64,000 bases of DNA from Carpediemonas membranifera BICM (taxonomy: Eukaryota > Protista > Fornicata), in the NCBI GenBank assembly GCA_019828565.1, contig JAHDYR010000029.1, positions 62,001-126,000 on the forward strand, read 5' to 3'. The translations under genes were made by a program, and so were the position numbers. The notes under the pieces were generated by a model. It saw only the letters and a program-made list of their open reading frames with translations. It was not told where the DNA came from and made no database searches. This document shows positions 4,403-37,344 of the stretch, one piece after another. Within the stretch, counting starts at the first letter, position 1; every line of letters begins with the position of its first letter.

Positions 4403-4414
4403 AGAATCGATTCT
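4403..4414. other. 12-bp palindrome AGAATCGATTCT at the PBS position of element A
   Basis: Perfect palindrome overlapping the last base of the putative LTR; no TGG-type PBS. Confidence 0.8.
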
Positions 4415-4508
4415 GTGGCGACAACAGTATTTACACATAACCTGCGAAGCAGGGGTGAGTGTGCCCGTAGTTATAAATAGCAATAATAATAACTGAGGCA
4501 CTGACACA
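4414..4508 (-). repeat. Putative 5' LTR of element A (about 95 bp)
   Basis: TG...CA termini, TATA-like TATTTATAA, 23 nt upstream of the gag ATG. No partner LTR in the window, so the boundary is inferred. Confidence 0.65.
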
Positions 4509-4642
4509 CGCTGGTCAAAGAGATCAAGGAAACGAGGACCGAGATGCGTAAGGAGAAGAAAGCCAACTTCTGGGACAGTGAATGGAATATTTCCGTTGAG
4601 GATGACGAAGAAGTGTAAATGAAATGAAAATAAAACAAGAAT

Positions 4643-5405
4643 TTATAGCTCCTGTGCCGAACACTCTAAGTAGTAATTCATGATGGCTTGGTATACCTTG
4701 CGACGCAGCACATCACGCGATTCAGCCTCAGCACGTTCCGCATTCCGCTTGGCAATGACAGAAGTGAGCTGACTGAGTGTCTTAGCCTCCTTCTTCAGAA
4801 CTCTGGTGGGTCTGGCGAAGATGAGATCCGCGTCGCGGTCACGGCAAGGCTTGCTCAGGACGAGCTTGACGTCATCGACCGTCACACCGCACGATGAAGC
4901 AGCGAAGGCATGGACCTTAGCCCGGTAGGCGATGGGAATGCGGTGAAAGGCATCATCCATCTCGCGGACAGTCGCGATGAGTGGGTCGTCCGTGTCCAGC
5001 TCATCTGTCTGGGCGTCAAGACTGAGGAGAGCCTTGAAGCGGTGACGCTTGTCCTCATCACCGCCTCCCCTGCCACTTGCGGCTGATCTCTTCGACCGAC
5101 TGGAGATTGCCGTAGAGCTTGTCCTTCTTCAAGGAGGCTACTTTCATCTTAGGGACCTCGGCGGCAAACTTCTGGCTGAAGTCGACAACCCATCCGTTTG
5201 CGCGGGTAATATCGTCATTATTAGTGAGGAAATTGCTGATAAAGGTCTGAACAATCTCGATGGGCGTCTTGTGAGCTTTTCGGGCTGTTTTCGTGGACTT
5301 GTTGGACTTGCTCTGGCTCTTTTGCTGCGCTTTCTTGCCAAGAGCCATTCTCCTCTCCTTTTGAGCTTCAGTGGCCTGTATATTGCCTTGTTTACTTCTT
5401 GCCAT
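4643..5405 (-). CDS. Hypothetical Lys-rich protein, one frameshift near 5080
   Basis: ORFs 5058-5405 and 4643-4960 join through an open alternative frame. No recognised domain. Confidence 0.45.
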
Positions 5406-5730
5406 CGTTGTTTCCTTAAAATGCGTGTGAAAATGTGAAATGAACTGTGACTCTCGACATTGCTGCGCAGCTATGGTATTCCAACGGCACAGAACGGGTT
5501 TATAGCATGCATATGATCCATTCTGGTGCCTTTATCCTCTATAACCAACATCAGTCCATCAAAATGAATCTTGCAACAGAATACTCATCCACACGCATCG
5601 AGAACGAAAAAGAAGCATATAACCAACATCAACAACCTAATAGAAGGCTGCATGCAAGCGTAGAGCTCTCCTAGTCAATTCTTCATTTTCACCACCATCG
5701 ATCTCCACGTCAGGATGAAACCGTGCGCCC

Positions 5731-5781
5731 AAAAGCTCAGAGATGCCGTTATAGATGATATAACGACGTCTCTGAGCTTTT
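5731..5781. repeat. Inverted repeat, 23-bp stem with 5-nt loop
   Basis: AAAAGCTCAGAGATGCCGTTATA / TATAACGACGTCTCTGAGCTTTT. Confidence 0.85.
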
Positions 5782-5821
5782 CAGCGATTTCAGTTTCTGG
5801 CCATGGATAAGCTACAAATCC

Positions 5822-5886
5822 TGTCAATGTTGTCCTCAGAGGACACTGAAAAAATTAATCTGTGTCCTCTGAGGACCAAATTGACA
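5822..5886. repeat. Inverted repeat with 25-bp arms; one arm recurs directly at 6066-6085
   Basis: TGTCAATGTTGTCCTCAGAGGACAC / GTGTCCTCTGAGGACCAAATTGACA, 23 of 25 positions match. Confidence 0.85.
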
Positions 5887-6854: not shown

Positions 6855-6914
6855 GCCAGACCAATCTGACGACGGAGACGACATCATTCTTGGGAACGAA
6901 CTGATGGCCTTAGA

Positions 6915-7379
6915 AGAAAGAAAGAAAGAAAATTTATGGTGCCTGGTATCGGGCCCCGGTTACTTAGGCTGATCTCCCTTATTACTGGAGCCGAGTTCCC
7001 CGGGGCGCTGCCTCCTCCCTGCGATTGAACTTGTCAGCTGCGTCCAACGAGCGATTCGGTGCTACTGCTTCCGCTCACTCCCGATTTCACTTCCCCCCAT
7101 AGGCCTTCGCCATCTCCGTGCGCTGAGCGCTTTCCTGTCTCCCTGTAAACCCGGCAGCTTCCAGGGAGCCTGGGGGTCTGTCCTCGGTGCTTCCACAGGC
7201 AGGTTTGTCCTGCAAGACCTTCTCTATAGCACTCCCTGATTCCCTGCAGTCCCTACGGGGTCGTTCAAGCATGGCACCCTCTCCTCTTTCCAGATTCCCT
7301 GTTCAGTGCCCCCACGACCCTGTTAAGTGGCCTACCCGTGGGCGGGGAAAGCAACTAAGTCCCTCTCATCTACCCCTGT
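6915..7379 (-). mobile_element. 5'-truncated (TTTC)n-tailed non-LTR-like insertion in element B
   Basis: 14-bp TSD CTGATGGCCTTAGA at 6901-6914 and 7380-7393; (GAAA)n at the left end; homologous to the 3' region of element X. Confidence 0.9.
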
Positions 7380-7393
7380 CTGATGGCCTTAGA

Positions 7394-11459: not shown

Positions 11460-11502
11460 AGAGGAAGAAGACAGAGAGAAAGAAAGAAAGAAAGAAAGAA
11501 AG

Positions 11503-12499: not shown

Positions 12500-12982
12500 T
12501 TGATGAACCAACACTTCCCTCCCATGCTCCGGTAGAGCATCAAAAAACTCAACACTATTATGAAGGGTGTGTTAGGTGCTTGGTCCGGGTGAATTGCCCA
12601 GATACAAGCTCCAGTAACCGTCGCTTCCATGGGGACTCGCCATGGAGCCGGAGTTGGCAATGGACTAAGCCCTATTGCCTGAACCGTTGTGAGCTCGGGA
12701 CTTTCGAGTTCACCGGATACCCGTTGACCAGACTGGCTATAAAAACCCTGTGTCTTATGCCCGGCGTGATGTCCAGTCACGTTTCTGAGATATGCTTACC
12801 TCACTACCAAATCTAAATTACCTAATATTATCTGATCAAATCTTGCGTGGTACCACTGTATTAGCGCGCTATGTTATGGGTATCCTTACCTGGGGTCCTG
12901 CCCCTCTTGAAAGTCTTTGAAACATACCCGACGATTCTGAAAGGGTCAAATGGCGCACTTTTAGGTGCCATCGATGTCCCCA

Positions 12983-13064
12983 TGTCACCGGTCTATAAAC
13001 TGCTCCGTCCAGTTTTGACCACTTTTACCCCGCTGCGGTTTACTGTAAATGATTTCAACCGACA
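12983..13064 (+). repeat. 5' LTR of element E (82 bp)
   Basis: Identical to 17262-17343; TGTC...GACA termini. Confidence 0.96.
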
Positions 13065-13075
13065 ATACTAGTATT
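13064..13075. other. 12-bp palindrome AATACTAGTATT at the PBS position of element E
   Basis: Directly abuts the 5' LTR; no TGG PBS. Confidence 0.92.
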
Positions 13076-13085
13076 AGCTGTGCTG

Positions 13086-16000
13086 ATGTCGTTAACTGTT
13101 CAAATTCCTGAGCTTTCTCCTTCAAATCTAACACTAGAGACTCTTGAGGAGTTTGAGCGCCGAGCAACGATTTTTACTATACAAAACCCAAGCATCCCAC
13201 TGTCCGTCCTCATTGAGGAGTCATTTGCCCTCGAACTCAAGGCCGAAGGCATAGACACATCCGACAAGAACTACACTCTCAAGAACTTCACCGAATGGTG
13301 TCGCCAGCGGCTCCTTCCCCACTCCATCCTAGCACTCGTCGAAGAGCTCCAAGACCTTCGTTTCCCCATGGTGCCGAGCACCGCACGCAACTTCGAAGCT
13401 GGCACGAGACTACAAGCGGCAGCATTCCGCAAGCGCATCGAGCTCTACTCCAAGACGCCAGACCCAGAAGGGTTCTTGGACCCCATCGACGACAACCCCA
13501 ATGCCGACGAACTGCTCGCAAGCTTTGATAAGCTGGCTGCACGGCTCTTCAGGGAGTCCCTGAACCCGACAGCATTCCGCAAGAAGGCACAGACCTTGCT
13601 TGCTCTCCACAACGTCAAGACCTTCGAGGACACCGTAGCGGTGGCTCTTAGGGCTGCTAGGGCGTATGACCATGATCAACCCCTCTCGCAAACCCCGGCC
13701 GGCGGACCCAAGGCCCCGGCCCAGGCCAGGAAGGCCCAGTACCGCCCGGACGCGGCCAAGCGCCCGCCGGCCGACGGACCCAAGAAGCCGTCGCGCCCCT
13801 GTCGTTTCTGTGGCGGTCCCCACATGGACTTCAGATGCGATAAGCACCCCCGCTACAGCGAGAACAACAACGCCGACAGCGCGTCGACTAACGAGAAGGG
13901 CGGGAAGGGTCCACTGACGACCCCCCGCTACTGTAAAAGGCAAAACTTACTCGTTCGTTGTAGACACTGGTGCAAGCCGAAGCTTCATTAGTTCGAAGGC
14001 ACTACGTACCCTACCCAAGGACACAGTGCAGACCTCTCTCGAGGAAAAGATCAAGGTCACGCTAGGAGACGGACGCTCCCTCGTGACAGATCAAGCAGTC
14101 ACATTTAAGGCAGCATTCCCAGCACTAGGTGTCACACCGTTGGAGGTTACATGGAAGTACTACGTACTCCCCGGTGAGTTCTTCAAGGCTCTCATCGGGT
14201 GTGACTTGCTGAGGTCACTCGCACTCATTGGCGATGGCACACTCAACCTTAACCTGCACAAGCTCTCCTCAATTGAGGGAGGACGAGGACTGGCTGCCGT
14301 TCTACCATGAATATCTCACGGAGGACGCAAACATGGCGATAACCGACGACTACTGTGGTGTCCACGTCCCGGAGTCGAAGATCCGACCCGAGATTCTCGA
14401 GATAATCAACTCATTTGACGATATCTTCGAGGAAGAACTACCCAAGGAAGGGTCTCGACTGGAACCCATGTCGATTGAACTGATAGACGAGCGGGCAATT
14501 GTACAATGCCGCGCTCGCAGACTCGACCCAGTGACCCAAGGCCTGGTGTCGACAGAGCTAGAACAACTCAGGCGAGACGGGATAATCCAGGACTCGACTG
14601 GGCCGTACAGCTCGCCGATCGTAGTAGTCAGGCAGGGCCACAAAGGATCGACCAAGATCCGTCTTTGCATTGACTACAAGGAGTTAAACTCCAAGACAGT
14701 GAGGGATAACTTCCCCCTGCCTAACACGCGCGAGTTTGTAGACCGAGCATCAGGCTGCAAATACTTTGCAGGCCTAGACCTCAGACAAGGCTACTACCAG
14801 ATGCGGATGCACGAGGAAGATATCCCCAAAACCGCTTTTGTCACTCCAGACGCATACTGCGAGTTCACCAGATGTCCATTCGGCCTGATGAACGCCCCGG
14901 CGAGATTCCAACGCGCCATGCAGAAGGCGTTCGCCGAGGTCCTCCACAAAGGGGTGGACATCTATCTTGACGACATCTTGATTTACGCCAAGACCGAGGC
15001 CCAGTTTCTCACCCTGATCAAAACCGTCTTCAGGATCTGTAGACATTATTCACTGCGCCTTAAAGGCCCGAAGTGCACGATAGGCTCAGCCCACGTCGAG
15101 GCCGTCGGGTATATTGTCTCGGAGAAGGGGAAACAACTTGCCCCAGAGAAGGTAGAGGCGGTAAACGCCATACCGCTCCCGTCCACCGCAAAGGAGCTTC
15201 AGAGGACACTGGGATCATTCAACTATGTCGCCCAGTTCGTCCCGGACTCATCACGAATCCTCAAACCTCTCAACGAGATGCTAACGGCACAGGAGAACTC
15301 AAAGAACATAACTTGGAACCCCAAACAAGAAGAGGCGTTTACAACGTTCAAGGAGAGACTCAGCTCAGACACAGTCCTCCATTTCCCCGACTTCTCAAAG
15401 AAGTGGACCCTCGAGACGGACGCGTCGAACGACGGACTAGGGGGCATTCTGTTCCAAGAAGACGACTCCGGCAACCGAGAGATCGTCTCGCTCTTCGCAA
15501 AGTGTCATACGCCAACCCAGACTAGGTGGCCGACCTACGAACAAGAGCTTCATGCTATCATCTTTTTGTCTCACGAGACCTGACATGGCTCAACTTTTCC
15601 GCCTCAAGGACAACATACAGATCCGCACCGACCACCAGAATCTGGTATATCTCATGCAGAGGAAGGAGCTTTCCAAGAAACTCCTCAGGTGGACGTCTGT
15701 CTTGTCGGACTACAACATTACGATCGAGCATATTGCTGGAGAGACAAACAAGATGGCAGACATGCTGTCGCGTATCCTTCCCCGAGGGGGACCTCGGGCC
15801 GCAGCTGAACCTGCTAGAGGCGGAGGACGCCGGCCCAGGGCTGACCCTTGAGTTGATCCAGGCTGCCCAGGCCATGGCACCTGAGTCAACTCGAGTCGGC
15901 TGGGAGAAACTAGAGGGAGTATCCATCGAAAACTCGATCTACTTCAAGGACGGAGTGCCGATTATCCCCAAGGGAGAGACACGCGACAAGGCCCTTCGGA

Positions 16001-17203
16001 CCGCTCACCAATTTCATACGGGAGCAAATTCAACGTTCCAAGCACTCGCCACGTCTGCATTTTTGGCCGGGGATGCTCTTGGACGTCAAAAAGCACATCA
16101 AGACGTGCCCCATTTGTCTGAAGACTCGCATCAAGGACTACTTTATCGCCCAAAAGGGCCAGACAAGACGCACCAGACCATGGGAGACAGTGGCAGTCGA
16201 CACAATTGGCCCTCTCCCAACGGATTCGCTGGGCGCTCGCTACATCATTGTGGCTGTAGACATGTTTACAAGATACACCGAGCTCGTCGCAGTCGCATCG
16301 ATCGACGCCGAGACCTCCGCCAGGGCCCTATGGGACCACGTTTTCACGCGACACGGGATACCGGCGGAGATTCTGTCCGACGGCGGCCCGGAGTACGCGA
16401 ACTCGATAGTTGAACAACTCACAACGTCATTGAAAGTCGCACACCACTTCACCATCCCGTTTCATCCACAGAGCAATGGTCTCGTGGAGAGAAGGAATGC
16501 GGAGATTGGAAGACACCTACGGTGGCTTGTCCTGGCAATAGCCTACAAAGACCAGTGGTGCGGACTCCTACCGACGGTCCAGATGATTATCAACGGCACG
16601 ACACATACGGCCACGAAGTTCTCCCCGCACGAGCTGATATTTGGCCATGAGCACAACATGTTTACAAGCTGGTGGACGAACGACAACAACTCTCCGATCA
16701 GAGATTTCCCAGAGTTCAAAAAGGACCTGGAGCTGGCCCTTAACGCCCTGGAGACCACTGCCAGAGAGAGTGTGGGCCCGGGCCAAAAGACAATAGTCAA
16801 CACCGAACTGAAGCCGGGTGACTACGTCCTCTGGAAAGATGAGGCCCCTCAGAAGCTAGACGCGCGCAACAGGGGCCCATGGAAGGTACACGATGTACTG
16901 GATAATAACAGAATAGTCATGCAGTCGATACTCGACGGATCGACCAGATCAACCCACATTGAAAAACTCATGATGTTCGACACGGATGCCGTAACGGACA
17001 CGATGATGCTTCAACTTGCAAGCTTCGACCAGAAAAAATGGGAGGTAGAGCGAGTAGTATCGGTAGACTGGAAAGAAGGGACAGCCGCCATCAAGTGGGT
17101 AGGATTCGAAAACATAACGGAAGAACCACTCTCGGGAGTGAAACACCTCGAGGAGATGAAGAGGTTGGCCCGTAAGGCGAGGAAGAACCTGAAACTCTAC
17201 TAA
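13086..17203 (+). CDS. Gag-Pol of element E (several frameshifts, possibly assembly errors)
   Basis: ORFs 13080-13991, 14026-14310, 14228-15583, 15552-15851 and 16073-17203 give consecutive domains. Confidence 0.88.
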
Positions 17204-17261
17204 CCATCTTTTTCCCCCGTTCCTTGCAGGTTGGGGGTTTTCTCATCAAAAAGGGAGGTAG

Positions 17262-17343
17262 TGTCACCGGTCTATAAACTGCTCCGTCCAGTTTTGACCA
17301 CTTTTACCCCGCTGCGGTTTACTGTAAATGATTTCAACCGACA
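17262..17343 (+). repeat. 3' LTR of element E (82 bp)
   Basis: Preceded by the PPT, followed by TSD CCCA. Confidence 0.96.
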
Positions 17344-17643
17344 CCCATGTCAATTCTTACCAGAGGTTGGTTACATTCCGCCTAATCTTACACGGCGTTC
17401 AAAAAACGGGTTAAGAGGCTCCAATTCCTTCTCGTTCGCGAGATATGGCACTTTTTCGTTTTGCACCGCCGGAAACACTTTTTGGATCCCGAAAACGCGG
17501 CTATATTGAATAACAACATCAGTTCCACCATGTAAACAACTCTATGTTCCACTTCTGAACAGCATTGTTGCGTAACCATTGCGTTTCATCGATTTCGCAT
17601 TTTTTGCTTTCTGGAAAGTCGACTTTCTAGACGATCACAGCTC

Positions 17644-18765: not shown

Positions 18766-18790
18766 ACAGTTTCTGATGCTTGGGGGCCAT

Positions 18791-22445: not shown

Positions 22446-22485
22446 GATCACCCTAGGGGCGAGCTTCATCCCGAGAGACTGGGGC

Positions 22486-23973: not shown

Positions 23974-24048
23974 TGTGACATGTTAGAGATGGAACGGAGA
24001 ACTGTTTACATAAAGTGCACTGCAGGTTGTGCAGGATAACCCATCACA
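23974..24048 (-). repeat. 3' LTR of element F (75 bp)
   Basis: Identical to 28611-28685; TGTGA...TCACA termini. Confidence 0.96.
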
Positions 24049-24068
24049 CTTCCCCTCCGGAGGGCGAC

Positions 24069-27000
24069 CTAGCGGCGTCCGCGAGTGCGGAACTTGCGCT
24101 TATAGCGGTCGAACAAAGGGCGCAGGTGCGGGTTGGTCTGGAGGTAATCGTCAAGGGCTGACAGCTGGTCGTAGTAGGCGTTATACGGGATGTAACTGTC
24201 TTCAGAATCTTCGAGGCCCTGCCAATGGATAAGCATTTCGAGGCGGCCAGAGCGTTCGCGATGCCCGACGATGGACTCGACAGGCTGTTCGTCCTGTTCG
24301 AACCCGACCAGGGTCTCAAGGTCCTTGAGCGACGTGTTATGGGCACGTTTGAACGGCACGAGGCGATCGGCATGTACGAGTAGCTCGGCCTTCGTGACCA
24401 GGTCCTGGAGGCGGTAGGTATTGGGGCTCTTCCCTTCCCCCACCATGCGGACAGGGCCGCGAATAGGGGCGAGGATTTTGGATGGAGTCTTCGTGGGGTA
24501 GCGTACGAGGACGAGTTCCTGGTCTTTCCAGGGGAACTCTAGAGTGTTGGCAGAGGAGGCCTTGGACTGCTCGTACGCCTCGATGCGCTGGCGGGCGAGG
24601 TCCTGAACCGCTTTCACGTCGGATTGGAATTTCTTGATTGCGGCTTGGGTTCTCTGGGAGGTGAGGTTGAGGAGTTGAATCGCGTCTTCAAGCTGGTTGT
24701 CCGACAGAGTGGTGAGTCTGGTAGTTGAGCCGAAGAGGATCTCGAACGGCGAAAACCCGGTGGTGGCGTGGGTGGATGAGTTGACGACGTGTTGGACGAA
24801 TGGTATCAGGTCGACCCAGTCGGTTGACTTAGCGTCGATCAGCAGTGCGCGGAGGCGGCGCATGATAGTTCCGTTGGTCCGCTCGACGATGCCGTTGGAC
24901 TGTGGATGGTATGCCGTGCTGAAGCGGTGGTTGAGTGTGAGGTGTCGGTTGAGCTCGGCGATGAAGGCGTTGCGGAACTGAGATCCTTGGTCTGTCTGAA
25001 TCTGCTTGGGCAGTCCGAACTGAGCCCATAGGTGGAGCATGGCAGTTGCGGCTTCCGCGGCTGAAGTGCTCTTGGTAGGATGGAGGAGCACGTATTTCGA
25101 AAATGTATCGATGAAGACGACGATATGGGCGAACCCATCGCAGTTAGGCAGGGGCCCGATCGTGTCGATCTGCACGGACTCGAATGGGGACAGGGTCTGG
25201 GTGGAGTGCCAGGGGTTGAGGTCTTCTTGTGGGCCTTCAGCTTCTGGCAGACTGGGCAGGTGGCCACATAAGTGGCGACGTCGTCGCGCATAGACTTCCA
25301 GGAGTGGCCGGCGGCCTTGAGGTTGCGGATCGTCTGGTCGACCGCGACGTGTGCGAACTTCCCAGCATGCGCCTGGACGATGGTGTCGAGATGGTCGTCC
25401 GTCGTTGACTCGTCCGCGCTGGCGCGGACGGGGGGCCTGGATAGGGCGTCGGCGACGAGGTTTGACGAGCCCGGAATGTGCCGGATCTCGAACGGGTATT
25501 CTGAGAGGATTAGGCGCCACCTTGTCAGCTTCCGGGTGCCCTCCTCTGATTTCATCAACAGCCAGACCAAGTTCCGGTGGTCTGTTGAGATTGAGAATGG
25601 CTTGAGCTTGAGCAGGCTACTGAACTCGGGGCGGGTGACACAGAAGACGATTGCGTACAGCTCCTGCTCGACAGTAGCCCATCGGCGTTGGGTGTCCGTG
25701 AAGGTTTTGGAGAAGAAGGCGAGAGGACGTTTGGTGCCGTCCTTATGCTGCCAGAGGACGCCGCCCAAGGCGATCGTGGAGGCGTCCGTCTCGAGGGTCC
25801 ATGTGGCGTTGAGGTCCGGGAGGGCCAGGGCCTCGTGGCTGGTGGACAGTTCCTTCATACGGGCGAAGGCCCTGTCATGCTGCTCAGTCCAAGGAAGCTT
25901 GTCGCTGCCCTTGGGTGACCCTTTCAGGAGGTCGTTCAGCGGGCCGGTGGATTCGGCAGCTGCGGCGGCGAGAGTGGGGATGTAGGCGGCAAGGTGGTTG
26001 AACTTCCCCATGGTCCGGCGGAGTTCTGTGACGGTCGTCGGGGGCTGCAGGTTAAGGATGGCGTCCACGCGGGACTGGGCGATGGAGCGGCCACGCGCGT
26101 CGATCACGAACCCGCATACTTCGACCTGGTTAGCGCCGATCACGCACTTGTCCGCGCGAAGACGCAGGTTACAGTCGTCGAGGCGTTCGAGGGTCGTTCT
26201 GAGAGTTGAAAGGAAGTCGTCTTGACTGCGGGCGAAGAGGAAGATGTCGTCTATGTAGACTCTGACACCGGGGATGCCCTCCAAAAGCGACTCCATGGCC
26301 CTTTGGAACTTCGCGGGGGCGTTAGTGAGGCCAAAGGGTACGCGCAAAAACTCATAGTGGTGATCTGGGACCGAGAAGGCGGTCAGGGGGATCGAGGCGG
26401 GGTCGACCCGTTGTTGCCAGTATGAGGTGCGGAGATCAAGGCTCGCGAAATAAGAGCATCCGCTGGCCTCGTGTGGGAGCTCGCGAAGGTCCGGGAGGGG
26501 AAATGCGTCCGGAACGGTCACGTCGTTCAGTGCGTTGTAGGCTACACAGAACCGGGGGTCTCCATTTTTCTTGGTTGCCATGGTGTGGGGGGACGCATAC
26601 GAGGATTTCGAGTCCCGGATGATGCCTAGACGGCGCATCTTCTCGATCTCGGCTTGTGCAGCCGAGCCGGGGGTCCCAACAAGGGGGCGGGGCCTGCACT
26701 TGATCGGCGTCGAAGACGTGAGTTCGATCACATGCGGCTCCAGGTCGCTTCCTTCCGGGTGTAGCGTCGCGTTGAACAGGCGAGGTCGTTCTGCCACTAT
26801 AGCACGGACCAGAGATTGGAACTCGGGCCCGTGGTCGTCTGGCACCGTAACGGAGAGGTACTCGTCGTCTGTCGACACCTCCACCAGGTCGGCGTCCAAC
26901 ATGTGGTGGTCCTCAAGGTCGTCTGGATCGCCCATTGAGGCGGGCATGATGACCAGGCGGTCGTTGGCGATGTACCCAAGGTGGGCAAGAAGGTCCTTAC

Positions 27001-28618
27001 CAACGAGGACTCGTCCGCTGTCACCCTTGATGACGTGGAGGGGCCAGACGGTCGTAACAGGGCGTCCGTCTACGCTAGGGAGCGTGATGGCGGCGACAGC
27101 GCGCTTACCAGTGGAGATGGTCTTGTTCTCGGCAGATGTGATCACAAGGCTCGAGTCTTCGGTTGAAAGAGCAAGCTCTTCGGCCTTGGCTGCAGAGATG
27201 GTGCAAACATCGGCTCCCGTATCAAGTTTCCCGTTACAAGGAGTTCCATCGATGTTCACCGTGGTGTTGATCGGAACAGAGGTGGTGTGAACCTCATCGG
27301 CAGAAGCTGCCTTCTTCTGGAGGTATATGCAGTTTTCTGTCGTGTGTGTGGAGTTGTAGCCGTGGTGCTTGCAGAAGTTGGAGAACCGCTCGGGGATTCG
27401 GAACTTCTTGCGGTCCTTAAACTGCGCGTAGCGGTCGCCGGAATCGAGCAGCCGGGGCTCCGGGAGGTCGTTGGCGTCGCTGCGGTCCTGGCTGTCCTCT
27501 CGGGCGGATGTCTCGGGCTTCTGCGGAGTGTCGGGCCGGCCATCGCGAGCGTGACGTGGCTTCTTGGGAGGCTTCGAAGGTGTCGAAGCCTCCTTGAACG
27601 CGCGCCAGGGTATCACGACGTTGCCCTCGTGGTCCACGGCGAGATCGCGGAGGGCTGCGATGCATTCGGCGGTGTTGCGGCGCTGGCCGTCAGCATCCGT
27701 CTCGACCAGGGCTTTGTACAGTGTCTTTGCGGCGCTGGTGTATCCTTCGAGGGCGAAACCAGCAACGATGTCACGCGTGGTGCTCTCGGGGAGGCGTGCG
27801 TAGTTGGTTGCGTCGACGTCCGGGTTGAAGGCGTTGAGGAGGTTCTCGACCTTGCTGAGCGCGAGCCTGTGCTGCGCCGAGGGGCCGAATAGAGTGGGGT
27901 GGGACGAGCTTGCAAGGGCAGCAAGCCGGGTGCCCCTGTCCGTGGAAGGCATCAGGGCTAAGTATAGGTGAGGGAGAATGGTCTCGGCCTCAGCAGCGAG
28001 GCGTTGGCGGAGGCTGGAGGTGTCTGCCACAGGGACCGAGGAGGGCAGACCCTCGTTCGCCGAACTAACGAAGTCCGCGCTGCGCGAGGGCTCGTCATCG
28101 AGCGGGTTGGCCAGGCAGGTGTAGGTCAGGAGGGAGATGGGTTGGCCTGGATCGGCCCGGAGGAGGGATGCGGTGTCCTGTAGCTCTTCCATAGTGTCGT
28201 CGAACAGGGCTTGGGCCCTGCGGAACGCAGGCTTCGTAAGGCTCGAGCCCTTGTACCGCGCCTCGGCGGCCGCGCAGAGGAGGAATAGGTCATCCTCCAG
28301 AAGGGCCTTGATCGCCCGGAGGCGCTTCGAGATGAGGTGGGAACGCGGGGAGAATGCCGGTTCCCCTGCATCGCGTTTGCTTCCCTCGGTGTCGCTAATG
28401 AGGGATTTGGTGAGCTCTTCGAACGTCGGGAACGCTTCCGAATGGCGCCATGAAGCCTTAATGAGTTCAAGGCTCTTGGCCGTGAGGCAGTTGAAGAACG
28501 AGCGCGGATGCTTCACGTTCAGGACCTCACGGGCCCACTTTTCGTGAGCGGCGTGGAGCGTCTTGGCGTCTGAAACGCTCTGGATAGTGTGAGCATCAGA
28601 ATATCGATATTGTGACAT
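24069..28618 (-). CDS. Gag-Pol of element F (single frameshift near 25215)
   Basis: CKHHGYNSTHTTENC knuckle, KLDTGAD, VYIDDIF, LETDAS, QIDTIGP, GIVERTN, chromodomain. Confidence 0.93.
28600..28611. other. 12-bp palindrome AATATCGATATT at the PBS position of element F
   Basis: Directly abuts the 5' LTR; no TGG PBS. Confidence 0.92.
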
Positions 28619-28685
28619 GTTAGAGATGGAACGGAGAACTGTTTACATAAAGTGCACTGCAGGTTGTGCAGGATAACCCATCACA
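28611..28685 (-). repeat. 5' LTR of element F (75 bp)
   Basis: Identical to 23974-24048; contains the in-frame gag ATG. Confidence 0.96.
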
Positions 28686-31127: not shown

Positions 31128-32078
31128 TTACTCCTCCTCCGTGGACTCCCCACTGCCGCTGCAGCTGTCCTCGGCCTGACTCACTTGCTGTCCTTGTAGA
31201 CTCTGCATTACCGTGATGAACTGGGTCATCAGGTCCATGGGTGAGATCTGCTTGGCCTTCTTAGCCTTCTTGTGCTTGTGCCGGGGGATCGTGGGCTTCT
31301 CCTTGCTGGGCTTAGTCGCGACGCCGGAGAGCACCAACCTTCCGTGGCCTTGCTCTTGCATGAGTCGGGCAGCCTTGAGCGCTGAGATCTCTTGTTGCGC
31401 CTCTGCCAACTGCTTTCGGAGCCGCAGCTTCTCCGAGTCCATGCCGGTTGCCTGTCTGCTTCCAGACTCCCAGTCCATGTCCTCTTCGTGCCTGCTTCTC
31501 TTTCCGCTGTCCGAGTCCATGATCCTACTCGTGCTGCCCTCCTTGCGCTTGAGCGTCGTGGAGGAAGAGTGATCCTTGCTGTTGTCCATGCCTCCCTCTG
31601 AGCCTCTACCGGCCCCGGTGTTCCCGCTGAACGAGCCTCTCATCTGCGTTCCCGTGTTGTCCTGTCTCTCCCTGTCGTCTCCTCCGTGGTTACGATCCGA
31701 GGTCCTGTTCATGTTACCAGCTCTGTCGCCGGTTCTGTCGTCAGCTCTGACACCAGCTCTACCGCCGGCTCCGTGTCCTACCCTTCTGTCCTCTTCCCTG
31801 TCTCCATGCTGGTCGTGATGTCCTTGATCCGCGTCCTGGCCGAAGTGCCTGCCCACCATCCTGGTGCTAATCCGCCTCGCCTTTTCCTCCAGGCCGTTGT
31901 CGAAGAACCTACTTTGGTATGGCTGTTCGGACTTTCCGTCGATGGTGGGGACATACGTGATGCCTGGGACATTGACTGTGTTGGCTCTGGGCTCGTCCGG
32001 GATAGCTGCCGAGACTAGTCTGGCCCCTTCCTTGCGCATGCGGCTTAGGATGGTCCCAGCCTCGCTGACCCTGACCAT
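31128..32078 (-). CDS. Element X downstream ORF, inverted copy (316 aa)
   Basis: Copy of 22486-23437. Confidence 0.6.
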   Translation of the reverse strand: MVRVSEAGTILSRMRKEGARLVSAAIPDEPRANTVNVPGITYVPTIDGKSEQPYQSRFFDNGLEEKARRISTRMVGRHFGQDADQGHHDQHGDREEDRRVGHGAGGRAGVRADDRTGDRAGNMNRTSDRNHGGDDRERQDNTGTQMRGSFSGNTGAGRGSEGGMDNSKDHSSSTTLKRKEGSTSRIMDSDSGKRSRHEEDMDWESGSRQATGMDSEKLRLRKQLAEAQQEISALKAARLMQEQGHGRLVLSGVATKPSKEKPTIPRHKHKKAKKAKQISPMDLMTQFITVMQSLQGQQVSQAEDSCSGSGESTEEE

Positions 32079-32118
32079 GCCCCAGTCTCTCGGGATGAAG
32101 CTCGCCCCTAGGGTGATC

Positions 32119-34634
32119 CTACCCCTGTTCCTGGGGGGCCTTGACGTTGACTATGACCTTCTCATAGTCCCTGAGGCTCTCTGCTAGGTCGTCGCAGCCC
32201 CAGACTCCTTGATGAGCCGTAGCCTCCTTCGAGGGCCACCACTCGTATAGCATGGCCATGGTTATGATGTCCTCCTCCCTTGCTGCCCCTAGGCCCTTCC
32301 TGACGCGTACCATGCGGAGCTGGTTAGCCGTGGCTCTTTCCATGATGGTCCATAGCGGGCTTCTCTCCAGTACACCTTCGTTGTCCATGATTGTGAGGGG
32401 GGCCAGTAAGATGCCCTTCATGCCCAACAGAACCTCCCCGAACCCGAAGCCGATGCCGAAGCGGTGTCCGTTGTCCGGGACTACGAGGATCCTGTCGCCG
32501 ACTTCCCTGCTGACGTCCCTTGCGTCCCCGATCGGGTACGTGCCGAAGATCTCAAAGGTGTCCCTCCTTGTCGCGAATTCCGGGCCTCCCATGATATCCA
32601 TGCCCGGCTCCGCCTTCCCGACTGCTTCCCATGGTCTTGTCGAGTGCCTTACCCATGTAGTGGTAGACGTCTGGGGTGCTCATCCTCTCCTTGCATAGGG
32701 CCCTGATCCTGGCTGTGAAGACTACTGTATCCGCCAACCCACAGTGGTAGCAACCCGCGGTGTGTCTGTGGTACGGACAGACTCCCTTGGGCTCGCTCCT
32801 GTTCTGCCATCCATTTGACCATGTTGTTACTGCTTCCAGGTAGTTGGCCTTGTCGAGGTTGTCCCTGAGGTTTTGGCCAGCCTCCTCCCTTGCCGTTGTT
32901 CTCCAGGATCTCTGGTAGCTTCTTCTCGTCCACCAGCCTAGCTTGGAAGAATTCCCTGGTTCCTTGCTCCAGTCCATTTGTGGGGTTCGTGAGGAGGAAG
33001 CTTTCCATCTCCACCCCCTTTGCATACATGATTATCTTCCAACCCTCCGACCTTTCGATCCTTGCCAGCTGAGCCGCCAGGCGGTTGGCCCAGTCCCTGA
33101 AAGTATGTATGTGCTTCTCATACTCGATCGGCGGCCGCCCCGTCCCGACCTCCACGAAGGTGGCCGGCGGCAGCCCTCGTCACTGCCCATGCCGTGTACC
33201 TCGCTTGGTCCATGCTTGCTGCCGGTATGTCCTGGTAATACAGGCCATGCCCGTGTCCAAGAATGTCCCCAGTGCTGAGGTCAAAGAGTACGATCCCGCC
33301 CTCAACCGGGATGGCAGGGATCCCTGCCTTCTTGACGCCAGGGTCTGCGCACTCGAAGTCGATGGCTCCGATCACCAGTCGTTTCTCCTTGTCCTTTCTA
33401 GGCATCCTCGGCGGCTGGCTGCTGACCTTGTTTGAGTCGACCTCCTCGTCCTGGTCGATCTTGCCTTGGTTGGCCCCGACCATGTCCTTGTTCACTTCCA
33501 GGAGGCTGTCGTCGAGGCTTCTTCTGCCGGGCATGGTGGCCTGCTGGCGTCGTTCCTCCTTGTCCTTGACATGTTGCTCCTCGTCTCCGTCGATGACCGT
33601 GCTAGCGGACGACCTGTCCAGATCGGCATGTTCGTCCCTATTGCTGCGGACCGAGGTGGCCTTGAGCACTTCCAGCCTCACCTTCCGGAACGGCGGCTCG
33701 TTGCTAAGGGGGTCTCCTCCCCTTCGCCCAGGATATTGGTTCTGCCCTTCAGGTAGATCCCTGACTTGTTCCATGCTGCCTGCCATATGGCCGGGGCCTC
33801 CGGTGCCTGAAGCCTGAGGATGTCCCTAGCCTCCTCCATGAAGCGGCTGATGGACCATGCTGACGTGTCGCTTAGCTCTAGGATGACCCTGTACTTGCCG
33901 TCCTCTTGCTCGTAGGCCACTCTGGTGACCGGGCCTTGGTTTGCCGGATCCCATACCTTGTCGTAAGGCACGCCTTCTACGGCCTCGTCTCCATGAGCCC
34001 CTGATACCAGTATGAACGACCCTTCGGCCTTCTTGACGCTGTCCCTGTCTACATCCCATTCGATGGGCCCATCTTCCTTCGGCTTGAGGATCGCCGTCTC
34101 GATGTCCTTCTCAGATGGCCATCTTGCCATGCCAGTGAAGCCCGCTTTCAGCGTCTTGGGCTCCAGTGCCTGTGCCATGTCCTTTGCTTCCTCGTCTCTG
34201 GGGTTGAGCGCCTCTGTGAGCATGTAGAAAAGGTCGCGGAGGCCGTGGATGCCGCATGGGTTCCTGAGGATGATGTCCTTGTTGTCAGTGACGCCGGTTG
34301 CGAAGAGGATGCGTCTGGCGTTCATGATTACTTCCTTGCGTCCTTTGGAGTTCGCATTGAGCGACTTTCCTGTAAACTTGCCTGTTCTACGAAGAAGTAG
34401 AGTCCTTGAATCGTTCCTTTCAGCGAGGAAGCTGTCCAGTAGTTCCCTGATGTCCTCCCACTGCTTCTGCGTGGAATCCCTGATCCTTGTCGGTATTTCT
34501 ACCTGCATTGTTGAGTGCAAAATTTCTCCCCTTTTCCTAGTCCATAAACTGGGTCGGAATTTTTGGGTCCGAAAGTCGGGCCACATGTACATATCCGGGT
34601 GAGGTCTCCGTCCAGGCCTTCCAGTTTCTCCCAT
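32119..34634 (-). pseudogene. Element X ORF1, inverted copy with several single-base indels
   Basis: Fragments match the translation of 19933-22445. Confidence 0.75.
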
Positions 34635-35119
34635 TGTCCATGCTCCGTACTATATAGGCCATTCTTTCAAAAAGGCGCGGTCCTAAAAATGCGTCGCCCT
34701 TTTCTGAGTAGCGGGGCCTTTCTGTGTAGTTGTTGTTGCTTTGTTCGTAGTCTCCTTTTAGCCTCTATCGACGGCCCCTGTTTCCCTTTTGTGCTGCCCT
34801 TCCTTCCTTGTGGTCTTGACAAAACCATGTAGCCGCCGGTGCTAGCACTGGCCCTCGACGGTTGTTTTCCTTTTCCTTGTAAACATACGTTCCATGAAGA
34901 CACTTTGATTCCTTGGTATGGGCGTGGAGCTCCCACTCGCGCCCAGCGGTATGCCCTGATAGCAACCCTTGAATGTTCAGACAGGAGGCCAAGGCCGCTC
35001 CTTCTGAGCTCCATGGGGCACTGCCCTATCCATATAGGCCAGGCCTGTTGGTCCTTGTCCATCCATGATCGAAGTGTTTCCACTTTGCTGAAATCATTGG
35101 TGAACTGGAAGGTCACCAG

Positions 35120-35692
35120 GTGGTAACATGTCTGCAAGGTAAGCCTACGGTAGACCGAAAGGCTGGGAAGGGGCAAAGCAGGGCGGAATGGAAGAGAATT
35201 GTATCCATTGCAGCCAATGTCAGCCCATCCCCATCGTCGGCAGAGAGAGGGGAGGGCCCTATGAGAGCCATCACAGAGCTGGCCCAAGGCGCTGACCTGA
35301 AGAGAGAAATTAGCAGACTATGCCCCCTATGCTCGGAGGAGTCGGAGGTGAGCCTGTTCTACAGGATCATTAGGGAAAAGCCAGGACCAGCAAGGAAGCA
35401 GGAAATGATCAGGGAGTGGGCAGAGGGCCAGAGGCTAGGATCGGCAGCGCACATAATCTGTGAATGCCCGGCAGTAGACAGGGGAGAAGCTTGGACAAAG
35501 CTGTGGACAGCAGCGAAGCACAAAACTAAGGACTTGGAAGTAAGGCAGGGCCCCCAGGGCGAATGGTACCAGGAAAGACCCATCCTAGAATTACAGCAAC
35601 TAATAATATGGGGCTCGGAGGACATTTGGGAAGGCCTCACGGCAGGACTACGGGAACTGGCAAAGGTTTACAACAGCTTCAAGGTGGAATAG
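35120..35692 (+). CDS. Element X zinc-finger ORF (CxxC...HxxxxC), like the C-terminal zinc finger of non-LTR ORF2
   Basis: LCPLCSEESE...AHIICECPAV. In the reconstructed element an in-frame ATG at 23613 gives MEGHQVVTCL. Partial copies at 29261-29716 and 29716-30019. Confidence 0.6.
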   Translation: MVTCLQGKPTVDRKAGKGQSRAEWKRIVSIAANVSPSPSSAERGEGPMRAITELAQGADLKREISRLCPLCSEESEVSLFYRIIREKPGPARKQEMIREWAEGQRLGSAAHIICECPAVDRGEAWTKLWTAAKHKTKDLEVRQGPQGEWYQERPILELQQLIIWGSEDIWEGLTAGLRELAKVYNSFKVE

Positions 35693-36587
35693 AAGCATGT
35701 CATGAACCCCTGACTCCAGGACCGGGAAGGGATGGACAAGGAATCAGCCATGGACCACCCTCGCTGGTGCTAAGCTCCTGGGATCAGTGAGGAAAGGCCC
35801 CACGTATCCCGGTAGCCAGGAACCAAAGCAAGGGAAGGAACGACTGCAAGGAAATAACAGGAAGGACAGACCAGAAATAAGAAAGAAAGGACATGCAACA
35901 AGGACAGAGCAAGGATAAGGTCAAGGAAATCCATATTCATATGGTTGCACCACTCGTTGGGACCCCAAGGAAACTGCAGGGACTGGCCACGGGGGTCGGA
36001 GGGGCACAGGTGCCCCTGCCGCCCTTGTTAACGACATGGGAAACCAAGGACATGTAGTGCAAGCGAAATGTTGTAAGGGGTAACAGGACAACCAGGCCTA
36101 GTGCCTGGGGGTACACCACCCATGCCCTGACCCACGCCACCTAACCGGGGTAGACAGCATGGACTTAGTCACTTTCCCCGCCTTCGGGTAGGCTTCTTAA
36201 CAGAGTCGAGGGGGCATGGAATTGGGGAACCGGACAGACGAGAGGGTGCCGTGGCTGAACGGCTCTACAAGGACTGCAGGGAAGCAAGGAGTGTCATAGT
36301 CAAGGTTCTGCAGGACGATCCTGCCTGTCAATGCCCCGAGGACAGACCCCCAGGCTCCCCGGATAGTTGCCGGACTTTCAGGGAGACAGGAAAGCATATT
36401 TGCACGGAGATGGCCGCAGGGCCTCTGGGGCGATTGGAATCGGCTTTCCGCGGAGACAGTAGCACCGAAAGCCCAAGGCAAACGCTGCTGACCAGTTTGC
36501 CACGGGAAATAGGCAGTACCCCGGGGCACTCAGCTCCAAGACAACGGGAAACAAGCTCAGTCCGGGGTCAGAATCCAAGCACCATAA

Positions 36588-36618
36588 ATTTCTTTCTTTC
36601 TCTTTCTTTCTTTCTTTC
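36588..36618 (+). repeat. (TTTC)n 3' tail of element X
   Basis: Microsatellite following CCATAAA. Confidence 0.9.
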
Positions 36619-37330
36619 GTCCCTCTGCTTCTTCCAGCACTTTGTGGCATCGTAGCCCACCTTGTTGCAGTAGGGGCACTTGGTAGACGCCTTGTCTTCA
36701 TGCTTCTTCTTGGTCTTCTCGCCCTTCGACTCAACTGACTGACGCTGCGCCTCACGACTACCCTTCTCAGCCTCCAGGGCTTGCTCAAAAGCCACCTTCA
36801 TGGTCTCCTCGTTCTCTTGCTCTTCTTCTTGGCGCCGATTCGCTCTCTCAGGACTTGACAGCGGACTCCCGCGACGAACGCCTCCACGAGTTGCTTGGCT
36901 TGAGGCTGCAGCTCGCCGAAGTAGGAACACGTCTCCTTGAATGTCAGCACGTAATCGGCCATGTTCTCGACGAGATTGCCCGACTCGGGGCAATTCAGCT
37001 TCTTCAGCCATTCGATGGCCTCTAGCTCGTCGAGAGGTTGGAACATCTTGTTAATCAGGTCGATAAACTCCTCGTTCCACTCCGTCTCACGATCGGGGTC
37101 ATGCTCATCCATCGGTTCATCCACCACATGGAGAAAAGAGCCCAGCATGGGAGAACGGCACTTAAACGTTTCGAGCACTTCGTTTGACACCAGGTCGAAA
37201 ATAGCAATCGGATCACGGCACCTAGCGGCATAAGCACGCCAGGACTTAACCATATGGCGCCACTCCGCCACACCACAGAGACCTTATTAAGGTAGGGTGC
37301 GTAGTTCAGTACTGTTTCCGGTACTGCCAT
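36619..37330 (-). pseudogene. gag fragment of LTR element G
   Basis: MAVPETV start, helical gag-like body, CPYCNKVGYDATKC degenerate knuckle; frameshifted and truncated by element X. Confidence 0.75.
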
Positions 37331-37332
37331 GG

Positions 37333-37344
37333 CAATATATATTG
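37333..37344. other. 12-bp palindrome CAATATATATTG at the PBS position of element G
   Basis: Overlaps the terminal CA of the putative LTR; gag ATG is 13 nt from the LTR. Confidence 0.75.

What the first reader, a model, noticed from the sequence alone, without database searches (positions are those of the whole stretch)
4403..37344. Four different LTR retrotransposons carry a perfect 12-bp palindrome in place of the tRNA primer-binding site
Seen: every 5' LTR in the window is followed by a perfect palindrome overlapping its last 1-2 nt. These are AGAATCGATTCT (4403-4414, A), AATACTAGTATT (13064-13075, E), AATATCGATATT (28600-28611, F) and CAATATATATTG (37333-37344, G). Sequences differ but symmetry and position are kept, and none starts with TGG. 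LTR ends for E and F are fixed by identical LTR pairs; those of A and G are inferred. A 12-bp palindrome at a given centre has roughly 4^-6 chance at even composition, higher in AT-rich DNA. Known: LTR elements normally prime with a tRNA 3' end, while Tf1-type chromoviruses self-prime using a PBS complementary to the transcript 5' end; I see no such complement in these LTRs. Inference: two co-packaged RNAs could pair through the palindrome, and cleavage of one just 3' of it would give a 3'-OH at the U5 boundary of the other (dimer cross-priming). It could instead be a dimerisation signal used with another primer. I am not aware of this being described.
Basis: partly seen in the sequence, partly recalled or inferred. 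Interest (0 to 1): 0.92.

Follow-up and report, generated by a model that had tools for sequence, protein, structure and literature searches.

The report
Retrotransposons with a palindromic primer site
A whole lineage of gypsy-type jumping genes, in the protist Carpediemonas and in environmental DNA, carries a short perfectly self-complementary sequence exactly where such elements normally bind a tRNA primer, which suggests that two copies of the element's own RNA pair there to start DNA synthesis.

Summary
All four palindromes are at the stated coordinates, abutting the terminal CA of the 5' LTR of four divergent Ty3/gypsy chromoviruses (pol 35-43% identical). Their LTRs are unusually short (67-93 bp). 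The window is almost certainly Carpediemonas membranifera.

I found the same feature in 15 more element copies from C. membranifera and from metagenome, ENA and Logan contigs. That gives 18 different palindromes of 10-20 nt.

On an RT-RNase H tree these elements form one clade (96/91 support). All 19 members with a visible 5' junction have the palindrome. The 16 outgroup elements with defined 5' junctions all have TGG-type tRNA sites.

Pairs 1-5 from the centre are Watson-Crick in 13/13 distinct sequences, with 2-4 pair types each. Pair 6, which includes the LTR's last A, pairs in 12/13. Pair 7 falls to chance.

No LTR holds a Tf1-type complement, and no second copy of the palindrome exists inside any element. 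Only the site itself can pair with the site.

Best reading (about 0.5): self-priming in trans between two element RNAs. This is a variant of Tf1 self-priming and is unproven. Main rival: a dimerisation signal with an unknown primer. I found no prior description.

The parts
4414..4506 (-). Element A: 5' LTR, 93 bp, TGTCAG...GCCACA
   Evidence: The start is fixed by the start of similarity to a second copy (L004 10801-11886, 99.4%). The end is inferred from the CA plus palindrome pattern. It holds TTTATA and TGTAAAT motifs.
4403..4414 (-). Element A: palindromic primer-site AGAATCGATTCT; its first nt is the last A of the LTR
   Evidence: The ATG of the gag-pol ORF lies 11 nt downstream.
1563..4391 (-). 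Element A: gag-protease-RT-RNase H ORF (942 aa)
   Evidence: Pfam RVT_1, RT_RNaseH and Asp_protease_2. The adjoining ORF 985-1566 carries a chromodomain.
12983..13064 (+). Element E: 5' LTR, 82 bp, TGTCAC...CCGACA
   Evidence: 100% identical to 17262-17343. Target-site duplication CCCA at 12979-12982 and 17344-17347.
13064..13075 (+). Element E: palindromic primer-site AATACTAGTATT
   Evidence: It occurs only once in the 4361-bp element, even allowing 2 mismatches.
13080..17203 (+). Element E: internal region with gag, RT-RNase H and integrase, in several ORFs
   Evidence: Pfam RVT_1, RT_RNaseH_2 and rve; tblastn.
17248..17258 (+). Element E: polypurine tract AAAAAGGGAGG
   Evidence: Read directly, 3 nt upstream of the 3' LTR.
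17262..17343 (+). Element E: 3' LTR
28611..28685 (-). Element F: 5' LTR, 75 bp, TGTGAT...GTCACA
   Evidence: 100% identical to 23974-24048. Target-site duplication TAGA at 23970-23973 and 28686-28689.
28600..28611 (-). Element F: palindromic primer-site AATATCGATATT
24069..28618 (-). Element F: gag-protease-RT-RNase H-integrase-chromodomain coding region (two overlapping ORFs)
   Evidence: Pfam.
24049..24058 (-). Element F: polypurine tract GGAGGGGAAG
   Evidence: Read directly, next to the 3' LTR.
23974..24048 (-). Element F: 3' LTR
37343..37409 (-). Element G: inferred 5' LTR, 67 bp, TGTAAT...GCAACA
   Evidence: TG..CA ends, preceded by polypurine-like GGGGGAAG at 37410-37417. No second copy was available, so both ends are inferred.
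37333..37344 (-). Element G: palindromic primer-site CAATATATATTG, overlapping the terminal CA of the LTR
   Evidence: U5 and the leader on either side pair strongly (-17.2 kcal/mol, z = -3.1).
36609..37331 (-). Element G: gag fragment with a CCHC zinc knuckle, cut off at 36608 by the 1220-bp repeat unit
   Evidence: Read. Weak Retrotrans_gag hit.

Best explanation
These are members of a previously unrecognised clade of Ty3/gypsy chromoviruses with very short LTRs. In this clade the minus-strand primer-binding site is a perfect palindrome, usually 12 nt, whose first base is the last A of U5.

Proposed mechanism (inferred):
1. Two copies of the element's genomic RNA pair through this site and form a 10-16 bp RNA duplex.
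2. The element's RT/RNase H cuts one strand near the 3' edge of the duplex, as Tf1 RNase H cuts its RNA duplex between bases 11 and 12.
3. The 5' fragment of that RNA (R-U5 plus about 11 nt) then has a 3'-OH lying against the U5 boundary of the partner RNA.
4. That end primes minus-strand strong-stop DNA on the partner.

This would be Tf1-type self-priming made obligatorily intermolecular, so that genome dimerisation and priming use one and the same sequence.

Shown: the anatomy, the covariation, the clade distribution, and the absence of any other complement.

Inferred: RNA-RNA pairing, the cleavage, and the identity of the primer.
For: 1. Position. In seven elements with independently defined LTR pairs (E, F; H and I in L001; J in L002; K in L006/L007; O in L018), the palindrome starts at the LTR's terminal A. 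At most 3 nt of it lie inside the LTR.

2. Covariation. Among 13 distinct sequences aligned on the palindrome centre, pairs 1-5 are Watson-Crick in 13/13 with 2-4 pair types each. Pair 6 is paired in 12/13. Pairs 7-10 are paired in 3-4/13, which is chance. Five further sequences were found later.

3. Clade. All 16 palindrome-bearing RT rows plus four rows unscored when the tree was built form one group (UFboot 96 / SH-aLRT 91). Three of those four were then shown to have the palindrome. The fourth, WB, is 5'-truncated. Sixteen elements outside the group have TGG-type sites: 14 with true LTR pairs, plus L011 and L015, read upstream of gag.

4. One host genome holds at least five different sites (A, E, F/H, G, I), so no single host RNA can serve them all.

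5. No Tf1-like complement in any LTR: best matches are no better than shuffles. No second copy of the palindrome within six complete elements, even allowing 2 mismatches.

6. Conservation. F, H and K share AATATCGATATT+CTG although their LTRs and leaders have diverged. K is sister to an element with a different palindrome.

7. Energetics. Duplexes are -10 to -24 kcal/mol. A 12-mer hairpin would have only a 4-bp AU stem.

8. The palindrome stays at the LTR end whether the ATG is 0-13 nt away (Carpediemonas) or about 70 to about 570 nt away (L088-L090).

9. Precedents. Tf1 uses an 11-nt primer made by RNase H cutting an RNA duplex (PMC7175516; Levin 1996, cited). A paper on trans priming of Tf1 exists (Haag et al. 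2000, cited in PMC7235257).
Against: There is no direct evidence for any RNA species, cleavage site or strong-stop DNA. The transcript 5' and 3' ends are unknown.

The donor RNA loses R-U5 and the primer site, so it cannot complete a full replication cycle. The scheme therefore needs at least two packaged RNAs with asymmetric cleavage.

A palindromic site should also let plus-strand strong-stop DNAs anneal to each other, which is a cost.

For 12 of the 19 copies the right LTR boundary is inferred from the CA-plus-palindrome pattern and the polypurine tract, not from an LTR pair.

Only one host tRNA was available to test.

Tf1 itself was not in the tree, so descent from self-priming ancestors is not shown.
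Confidence: 0.5

Rival explanations
1. The palindrome is a genome-dimerisation and/or packaging signal, like a retroviral dimer initiation site. Reverse transcription is primed by something else at the same place: an unidentified small RNA, a protein, or de novo initiation.
For: Self-complementary sequences are the classical dimer initiation sites of retroviruses. Palindromes inside the primer site occur in MMTV, and one has been proposed to aid HIV-2 dimerisation (PMC8096270). In several elements U5 and the leader pair around the palindrome, as around a loop-displayed site (G, O, R, I, K; overall Stouffer Z = -3.6).
Against: It does not explain why the palindrome always abuts the U5 end and includes its last A. 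Retroviral dimer sites lie downstream of the primer site. No room or conserved sequence is left for a separate primer site, because nothing beyond pair 6 is conserved. A host primer cannot match five different sites in one genome. In MMTV the primer-site palindromes were not needed for dimerisation.
Confidence: 0.25
2. Self-priming in cis. The RNA is cut just 3' of the palindrome. The 12-mer folds back on itself as a mini-hairpin and primes copying of its own U5-R.
For: It explains position and symmetry as well as the trans model does. It also needs no second RNA for initiation.
Against: A 12-nt palindrome gives at most a 4-bp, mostly A-U stem with a 4-nt loop. The intermolecular duplex is -10 to -24 kcal/mol. 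Selection covers all six pairs including the two central ones (13/13 at pairs 1 and 2), and those would be loop bases in a hairpin.
Confidence: 0.07
3. The palindrome acts at the DNA level or in gene expression. It could be a binding site for a dimeric protein, an AT-rich metamonad initiator or promoter for gag, or a recombination or second-strand-transfer aid.
For: The sites are AT-rich in a GC-rich genome. In Carpediemonas they lie 0-13 nt from the ATG. From my own knowledge, Giardia-type promoters are short AT-rich initiators close to the ATG.
Against: Eighteen different sequences, some with GC-rich cores (GGATCC, GTGTACAC, GTGATCAC), cannot be one protein's site. In L088-L090 the ATG is about 70 to about 570 nt away, yet the palindrome stays at the LTR end. 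A promoter needs no perfect symmetry.
Confidence: 0.07
4. Chance, or an artefact of assembly or cloning.
For: Twelve-nt palindromes are not rare as such: about 18 are expected per 64 kb. One unrelated copy of ACAATAATTATTGT lies inside an outgroup LTR (L015).
Against: The same junction is occupied in 19/19 clade members, drawn from at least six independent assemblies or samples, and in 0/16 outgroup elements. Palindromes of 10 nt or more occur at about 1.2e-3 per position in 626 kb of held loci.
Confidence: 0.01

Closest known systems
Tf1/sushi-group self-priming chromoviruses (Tf1, Tf2, Tj1, sushi-ichi, Tcn1 clade)
   Same: They are Ty3/gypsy chromoviruses with no TGG tRNA site. The primer site is about 11 nt and directly follows U5. 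The primer is presumably the element's own RNA, released by RNase H cutting an RNA duplex (PMC7175516, PMC4600332, PMC6317226). Trans priming between Tf1 RNAs has been reported (Haag et al. 2000, known here by title only).
   Different: In Tf1 the site is complementary to the first 11 nt of the transcript, which lie in the LTR. Here no such complement exists. The site is complementary only to itself, so pairing must be between two molecules, and the primer would be the partner's whole leader rather than its 5' tip. The LTRs are far shorter. The clade is not sister to the 'Tf2'-labelled or GIN1-like vertebrate sequences in my tree. Tf1 itself was not available.
Retroviral dimer initiation sites (HIV-1 SL1 loop palindrome, MoMLV PAL sequences) and primer-site palindromes of MMTV and HIV-2
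   Same: A short perfect palindrome in the 5' leader is able to join two genomic RNAs. In some elements flanking sequences pair around it.
   Different: Retroviral sites are usually 6-16 nt in a hairpin loop downstream of a separate tRNA primer site. The MMTV and HIV-2 palindromes are by-products of the tRNA 3' end GGCGCC. Here the palindrome is the entire site at the U5 border, and there is no tRNA match.
Skipper elements of dictyostelids (unconventional primer site)
   Same: [quoted passage not shown]
   Different: Skipper has a degenerate polypyrimidine stretch, not a palindrome.
tRNA-primed Ty3/gypsy elements (the outgroup loci fetched here)
   Same: Same gene order, TG..CA LTRs and polypurine tract.
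   Different: They carry TGG... sites 0-5 nt after the LTR (for example TGGTGGCAGCGG, TGGCGCCC), and their LTRs are 185-590 bp.

Membership tests
Ty3/gypsy chromovirus (Metaviridae) | Gene order protease - RT - RNase H - integrase | tested here: met
   Pfam Asp_protease_2, RVT_1, RT_RNaseH, Integrase_H2C2 and rve, in that order, in F, A/B and E.
Ty3/gypsy chromovirus (Metaviridae) | Chromodomain at the integrase C-terminus | tested here: met
   PF00385 in F (24069-25520), B (8547-10073) and downstream of A (985-1566). The B hit passes the curated cut-off; the F hit is just below it and the A-downstream hit just above it. Also present in L088, L089 and L091.
Ty3/gypsy chromovirus (Metaviridae) | LTRs with TG..CA ends, polypurine tract before the 3' LTR, short target-site duplication | tested here: met
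   E, F, H, I, J, K and O have TG..CA ends. Polypurine tracts include GGAGGGGAAG and AAAAAGGGAGG. Four-bp duplications are CCCA, TAGA and GCGG.
tRNA-primed LTR retrotransposons | Site next to U5 complementary to a tRNA 3' end (starts TGG) or to a tRNA half | tested here: not met
   None of the 18 sites starts with TGG. The only tRNA held (Val-CAC, 47328-47401) gives at most 9 contiguous pairs including G-U. The full host tRNA set could not be tested. Five different sites in one genome and strict symmetry argue against any tRNA.
Tf1/sushi-type self-priming elements | Primer site complementary to the 5' end of the transcript (a segment inside the 5' LTR) | tested here: not met
   The best LTR complement is no better than shuffled LTRs in all 16 LTRs tested.
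Tf1/sushi-type self-priming elements | RT/integrase phylogeny within the Tf1/sushi group | tested here: inconclusive
   The clade is separate from the vertebrate 'Tf2'-labelled and GIN1-like sequences. Deep branches are weak (76/60), and no authentic Tf1 or sushi-ichi sequence was available.
Tf1/sushi-type self-priming elements | RNase H-dependent cleavage of an RNA duplex to release the primer | not testable with these tools
   This needs biochemistry or genetics.
Retroviral-type dimer initiation site | Palindrome displayed in a hairpin loop, separate from and downstream of the primer site | tested here: not met
   The palindrome is at the U5 border itself. Flanking stems are significant in only 4 of 16 tested at p<0.05, with K borderline at 0.057.

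The most novel reading that the evidence does not exclude
A fourth way of starting retroelement DNA synthesis, beside the tRNA 3' end, the tRNA half and the Tf1 5'-end fold-back. It would be obligate cross-priming inside the RNA dimer. The primer site of one genomic RNA pairs with the identical site of the other. One RNA is cut and serves as the primer. Dimerisation, primer supply and primer-site maintenance would then be one 12-nt element, independent of any host RNA. This would be an ancient invention that defines a whole chromovirus clade of protists.
Probability: 0.45. Interest if true: 0.9.

Novelty: new variant of a known kind. Interest (0 to 1): 0.8.

Why it matters
How a retroelement obtains its first primer is a defining step of its life cycle, and only a handful of solutions are known.

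A clade-wide, covarying palindrome at the primer position points to a host-independent solution that ties priming to RNA dimerisation. It is directly testable with paired half-site mutants.

It also gives a simple sequence signature for annotating these elements. Standard LTR finders look for tRNA-complementary sites and, to my knowledge, set minimum LTR lengths of about 100 bp. They would miss elements with 57-93 bp LTRs, so the transposon content of metamonad and other protist genomes may be underestimated.

Tried and rejected
1. Tf1-type complement of the site in the LTR: none above shuffles.

2. A second copy of the palindrome elsewhere in six full elements, in the manner of Ty3's bipartite site: none, even with 2 mismatches.

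3. tRNA match: only one tRNA is held, and it does not match.

4. Rfam scan of the window: only that tRNA.

5. A possible fifth palindrome, GAAAGTCGACTTTC at 17614-17627, lies 16 nt upstream of ORF 17644-18765. The ORF has no similarity to any gag or Pfam family, and the upstream sequence does not end in CA. Not counted.

6. ACAATAATTATTGT in L015 lies inside that outgroup element's 3' LTR, and the element has a TGGCGCCC site. Treated as chance.

7. The 1220-bp repeats (29716-30934 / 35389-36608) were considered as LTRs and rejected. They begin with (GAAA)n and end CCTTGCT, and a solo fragment has a 14-bp target duplication.

8. A generic scan for a palindrome followed by an ATG was too noisy, because of in-frame internal ATGs. 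It was replaced by junction-by-junction reading.

9. MAFFT aligned the sites on the ACA end rather than on the centre, so covariation was counted in a script.

10. Haag et al. 2000 is not held in the library. It is cited by title only.

11. The organism behind GCA_002919055.1 (PPCM01) could not be identified. It sits in the metagenome collection.

12. No contig looked human.


Full report
**What is in the window.** The first 37 kb is a nest of transposable elements. Intron-less host genes follow, then a tandem gene array. The long ORFs next to the four reported sites encode protease, reverse transcriptase, RNase H, integrase and a chromodomain. These are therefore Ty3/gypsy chromoviruses. They are mutually divergent: pol is 35-43% identical between A, E and F, and a 5'-truncated element B (7380-10073) is 70% identical to A. 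The best database match of F's polyprotein, and a 100% match of A's gag, are hypothetical proteins of Carpediemonas membranifera. A 99.4% identical second copy of A lies on another contig of that genome. The window is thus C. membranifera or a very close strain.

**Checking the observation.** All four palindromes are at the stated coordinates. Elements A, F and G are on the minus strand and E is on the plus strand. In each element's own orientation the order is LTR, then palindrome, then gag.
- E has an 82-bp LTR pair and F a 75-bp pair. Both pairs are 100% identical and are flanked by 4-bp target duplications (CCCA, TAGA). Polypurine tracts precede the 3' LTRs.
- The left end of A's LTR is fixed by the second copy.
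- G's 67-bp LTR is inferred.

In every case the LTR ends in CA, and the final A (CA in G) is the first base of the palindrome. Perfect 12-nt palindromes occur about 3e-4 per position in this window, so four out of four at one junction is not chance. The 1220-bp direct repeats at 29716-36608 belong to another kind of element and have no such site.

**Does it generalise?** I fetched relatives three ways: by exact-protein look-up, by a metagenome scan with a clade alignment, and by reading every 5' junction.

Elements with true LTR pairs:

| Element | Locus | LTR | Palindrome |
|---|---|---|---|
| H | L001 | 57 bp, duplication GCGG | AATATCGATATT |
| I (nested in H) | L001 | 83 bp | AGTGTACACT |
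| J | L002/L003 | 57 bp | ACAATGGATCCATTGT (the ATG lies inside it) |
| K | L006/L007 | 86 bp | AATATCGATATT |
| O | L018 | pair defined | AAAGAATTCTTT |

Elements whose LTR is bounded on the left by a polypurine tract and on the right only by the CA-plus-palindrome pattern:

| Element or locus | Palindrome |
|---|---|
| M (L005) | CAATAATATTATTG |
| N (L006, positions 1-82) | AGTATTAATACT |
| P (L008) | AAGTGATCACTT |
| Q (L009) | AATGAATTCATT |
| R (L010) | ACAATAATTATTGT |
| S (L013/L014) | CAGAAATTTCTG |
| L012 | AATAAATTTATT |
| L088 | AGTGATCACT |
| L089 | AGTAGATCTACT |
| L090 | AGTTTTAAAACT |
| L091 | ACAATAATTTAAATTATTGT |

The sources are independent: two NCBI assemblies, several JGI metagenomes, an ENA assembly and a Logan run. 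Host GC content ranges from 38% to about 60%.

**Phylogeny.** An IQ-TREE analysis of the RT-RNase H region used 49 rows (an earlier quick tree of 103 rows gave the same result). All palindrome-bearing elements fall in one group of 20 rows, with ultrafast bootstrap 96 and SH-aLRT 91. Four rows in that group were unscored when the tree was built. Three of them (L012, L088, L090) were then found to carry the palindrome. The fourth (window element B) has lost its 5' end. So 19 of 19 observable members have it.

Outside the group, 14 elements with true LTR pairs all have TGG-type sites 0-5 nt after the LTR. L011 and L015, read upstream of gag, have TGGCGCCC sites. The trait is therefore a shared derived character of an old clade, with internal branches of 0.3-0.7 changes per site.

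**What is selected.** I aligned 13 distinct sites on the palindrome centre.
- Pairs 1-5 are Watson-Crick in 13/13, with two to four different pair types per position.
- Pair 6 is paired in 12/13. In most elements this pair is the U5-terminal A opposite a T.
- Pairs 7-10 are paired in 3-4/13, the chance level.

The centre lies 5 nt beyond the LTR end in most elements (range 4-6). Typically 11 nt of the palindrome lie beyond the LTR, the same length as the Tf1 primer site.

F, H and K keep the identical 12-mer plus CTG although their LTRs and leaders have diverged. K's sister element has a different palindrome. Symmetry, length and register relative to U5 are conserved. The sequence is not.

**What it pairs with.** Five different sites coexist in one genome. 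None begins with TGG, and the only tRNA I could test does not match. The LTRs contain no Tf1-like complement, since best matches equal shuffled controls in all 16 LTRs tested. Within six complete elements the palindrome has no second copy even with two mismatches. The only nucleic acid known to be complementary to the site is thus the same site on another copy of the RNA, or on its cDNA.

The RNA homoduplex is predicted at -10 to -24 kcal/mol. A fold-back of the 12-mer would give only a 4-bp A-U stem, and it would leave the two always-paired central positions in the loop. Around the palindrome, the U5 end and the leader pair somewhat more than shuffled flanks (Stouffer Z = -3.6). The effect is clear in G, O, R and I and borderline in K. 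This resembles the stems that frame retroviral and Tf1 primer sites, but it is not universal.

**Most likely mechanism (inferred).** Two packaged RNAs form the palindromic duplex. RT/RNase H cuts one strand one or two bases from the duplex's 3' edge. The retained 5' fragment (R-U5 plus about 11 nt) primes strong-stop synthesis on the partner.

The requirement that the last A of U5 be paired fits a cut that needs duplex on both sides of the scissile bond. It also fits a first deoxynucleotide laid down opposite that A, which is needed for the integrated LTR to end in CA.

RNase H cutting of an RNA duplex between bases 11 and 12 is established for Tf1 (PMC7175516; Levin 1996, cited). Trans priming of Tf1 is the subject of Haag et al. 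2000, which I could cite only by title.

The scheme has costs: the donor RNA is sacrificed, and plus-strand strong-stop DNAs could self-anneal.

**Rivals.** The main rival is a dimerisation or packaging signal with an unknown primer. This is plausible because palindromes are the classical dimer sites. It does not explain the fixed register at the U5 border, and it leaves no place for another primer site. In MMTV, primer-site palindromes proved dispensable for dimerisation.

A promoter or translation role is unlikely. The palindrome stays at the LTR end when the ATG is about 70 to about 570 nt away, and a promoter does not need perfect symmetry. Chance and artefact are excluded by the comparative data.

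**Comparison with known systems and novelty.** Functionally the closest system is Tf1/sushi self-priming. The defining Tf1 feature, a complement at the transcript's 5' end, was tested and is absent, so these elements are not members of that class as defined. Skipper elements share only the lack of a conventional site. Full-text searches for palindromic or self-complementary primer sites in LTR retrotransposons found nothing, and the papers mentioning Carpediemonas retrotransposons do not address this. I rate it a new variant of a known kind (self-primed chromoviruses). It has a fair chance of being a distinct priming mechanism.

**Limits.** No transcript, particle or cDNA data exist here. Most metagenomic LTR right ends are pattern-inferred. 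The host tRNA set and authentic Tf1 were not available. The literature library is open-access only.

Noticed in passing
window 48000-61100 (possibly further): At least 11 head-to-tail copies of a 1248-bp unit, almost all 100% identical. Each carries a peroxiredoxin gene (AhpC/TSA + 1-cysPrx_C; for example ORF 48001-48588). This is a tandemly amplified antioxidant gene in a low-oxygen protist. Some copies have shifted ORFs, which may be assembly indels. Seen. TRF missed it because the period exceeds 500.
   Followed up: partly
window 19457-36608; solo fragments 6914-7378 and 11606-12257: A second, unclassified mobile element. A 1220-bp unit starts with (GAAA)n-TTTATGG and ends CCTTGCT. It flanks about 4.4 kb holding a 780-aa and a 255-aa ORF with no Pfam match. 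Two copies are present, 99.7% identical, in inverted orientation, with a partial tandem (152 bp of internal sequence after the unit at 29565-29716). A 465-bp solo fragment has a 14-bp target duplication, CTGATGGCCTTAGA. The layout recalls Penelope-like or other non-LTR retroelements, but this was not tested. Element F is inserted in one unit, and one copy truncates G's gag at 36608. Seen.
   Followed up: partly
L001 9952-10008 / 18608-18664; L002 1-57 / 4923-4979; window E, F, G: The LTRs of this clade in Carpediemonas-like hosts are extremely short: 57 bp in H and J, and 67-93 bp in the window. They are still flanked by 4-bp target duplications. Most contain a T(A/G)TAAA(C/T) motif 26-40 nt before the LTR end, often preceded by TTTATA. 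This may be a combined promoter and poly(A) signal. To my knowledge these are among the shortest LTRs of autonomous elements.
   Followed up: partly
window 37410-37417 (minus strand, just upstream of G's LTR): G's 5' LTR is preceded by GGGGGAAG, the same motif as the polypurine tracts of F, H and I. This could be the remnant of a tandem element sharing the LTR, or a coincidence.
   Followed up: no
window 17614-17627: A 14-nt palindrome, GAAAGTCGACTTTC, lies 16 nt upstream of an orphan 373-aa ORF (17644-18765). The ORF has no Pfam or gag similarity. A TGTAAAC motif lies about 80 nt upstream. It could be a very divergent member of the clade or be unrelated.
   Followed up: partly
L002 58-60, L009 110-112: In elements J and Q the gag-pol start codon lies inside the palindrome itself (AATGGATCCATT, AATGAATTCATT). 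The proposed cleavage would therefore remove the start codon region from the donor RNA.
   Followed up: no
window 47328-47401 (-): A single tRNA-Val(CAC) gene lies between the host gene block and the peroxiredoxin array.
   Followed up: yes
window 37983-46729: Long uninterrupted host ORFs: a DEAH helicase of 1283 aa, a CRAL-TRIO/PH protein, an NT-C2/DIL protein and a UCH protease. This fits the intron-poor, GC-rich Carpediemonas genome.
   Followed up: no
L015 5283-5296: The same 14-mer as element R's primer site (ACAATAATTATTGT) occurs inside the 3' LTR of an unrelated, tRNA-primed outgroup element. It is a reminder that AT-rich palindromes also arise by chance.
   Followed up: yes
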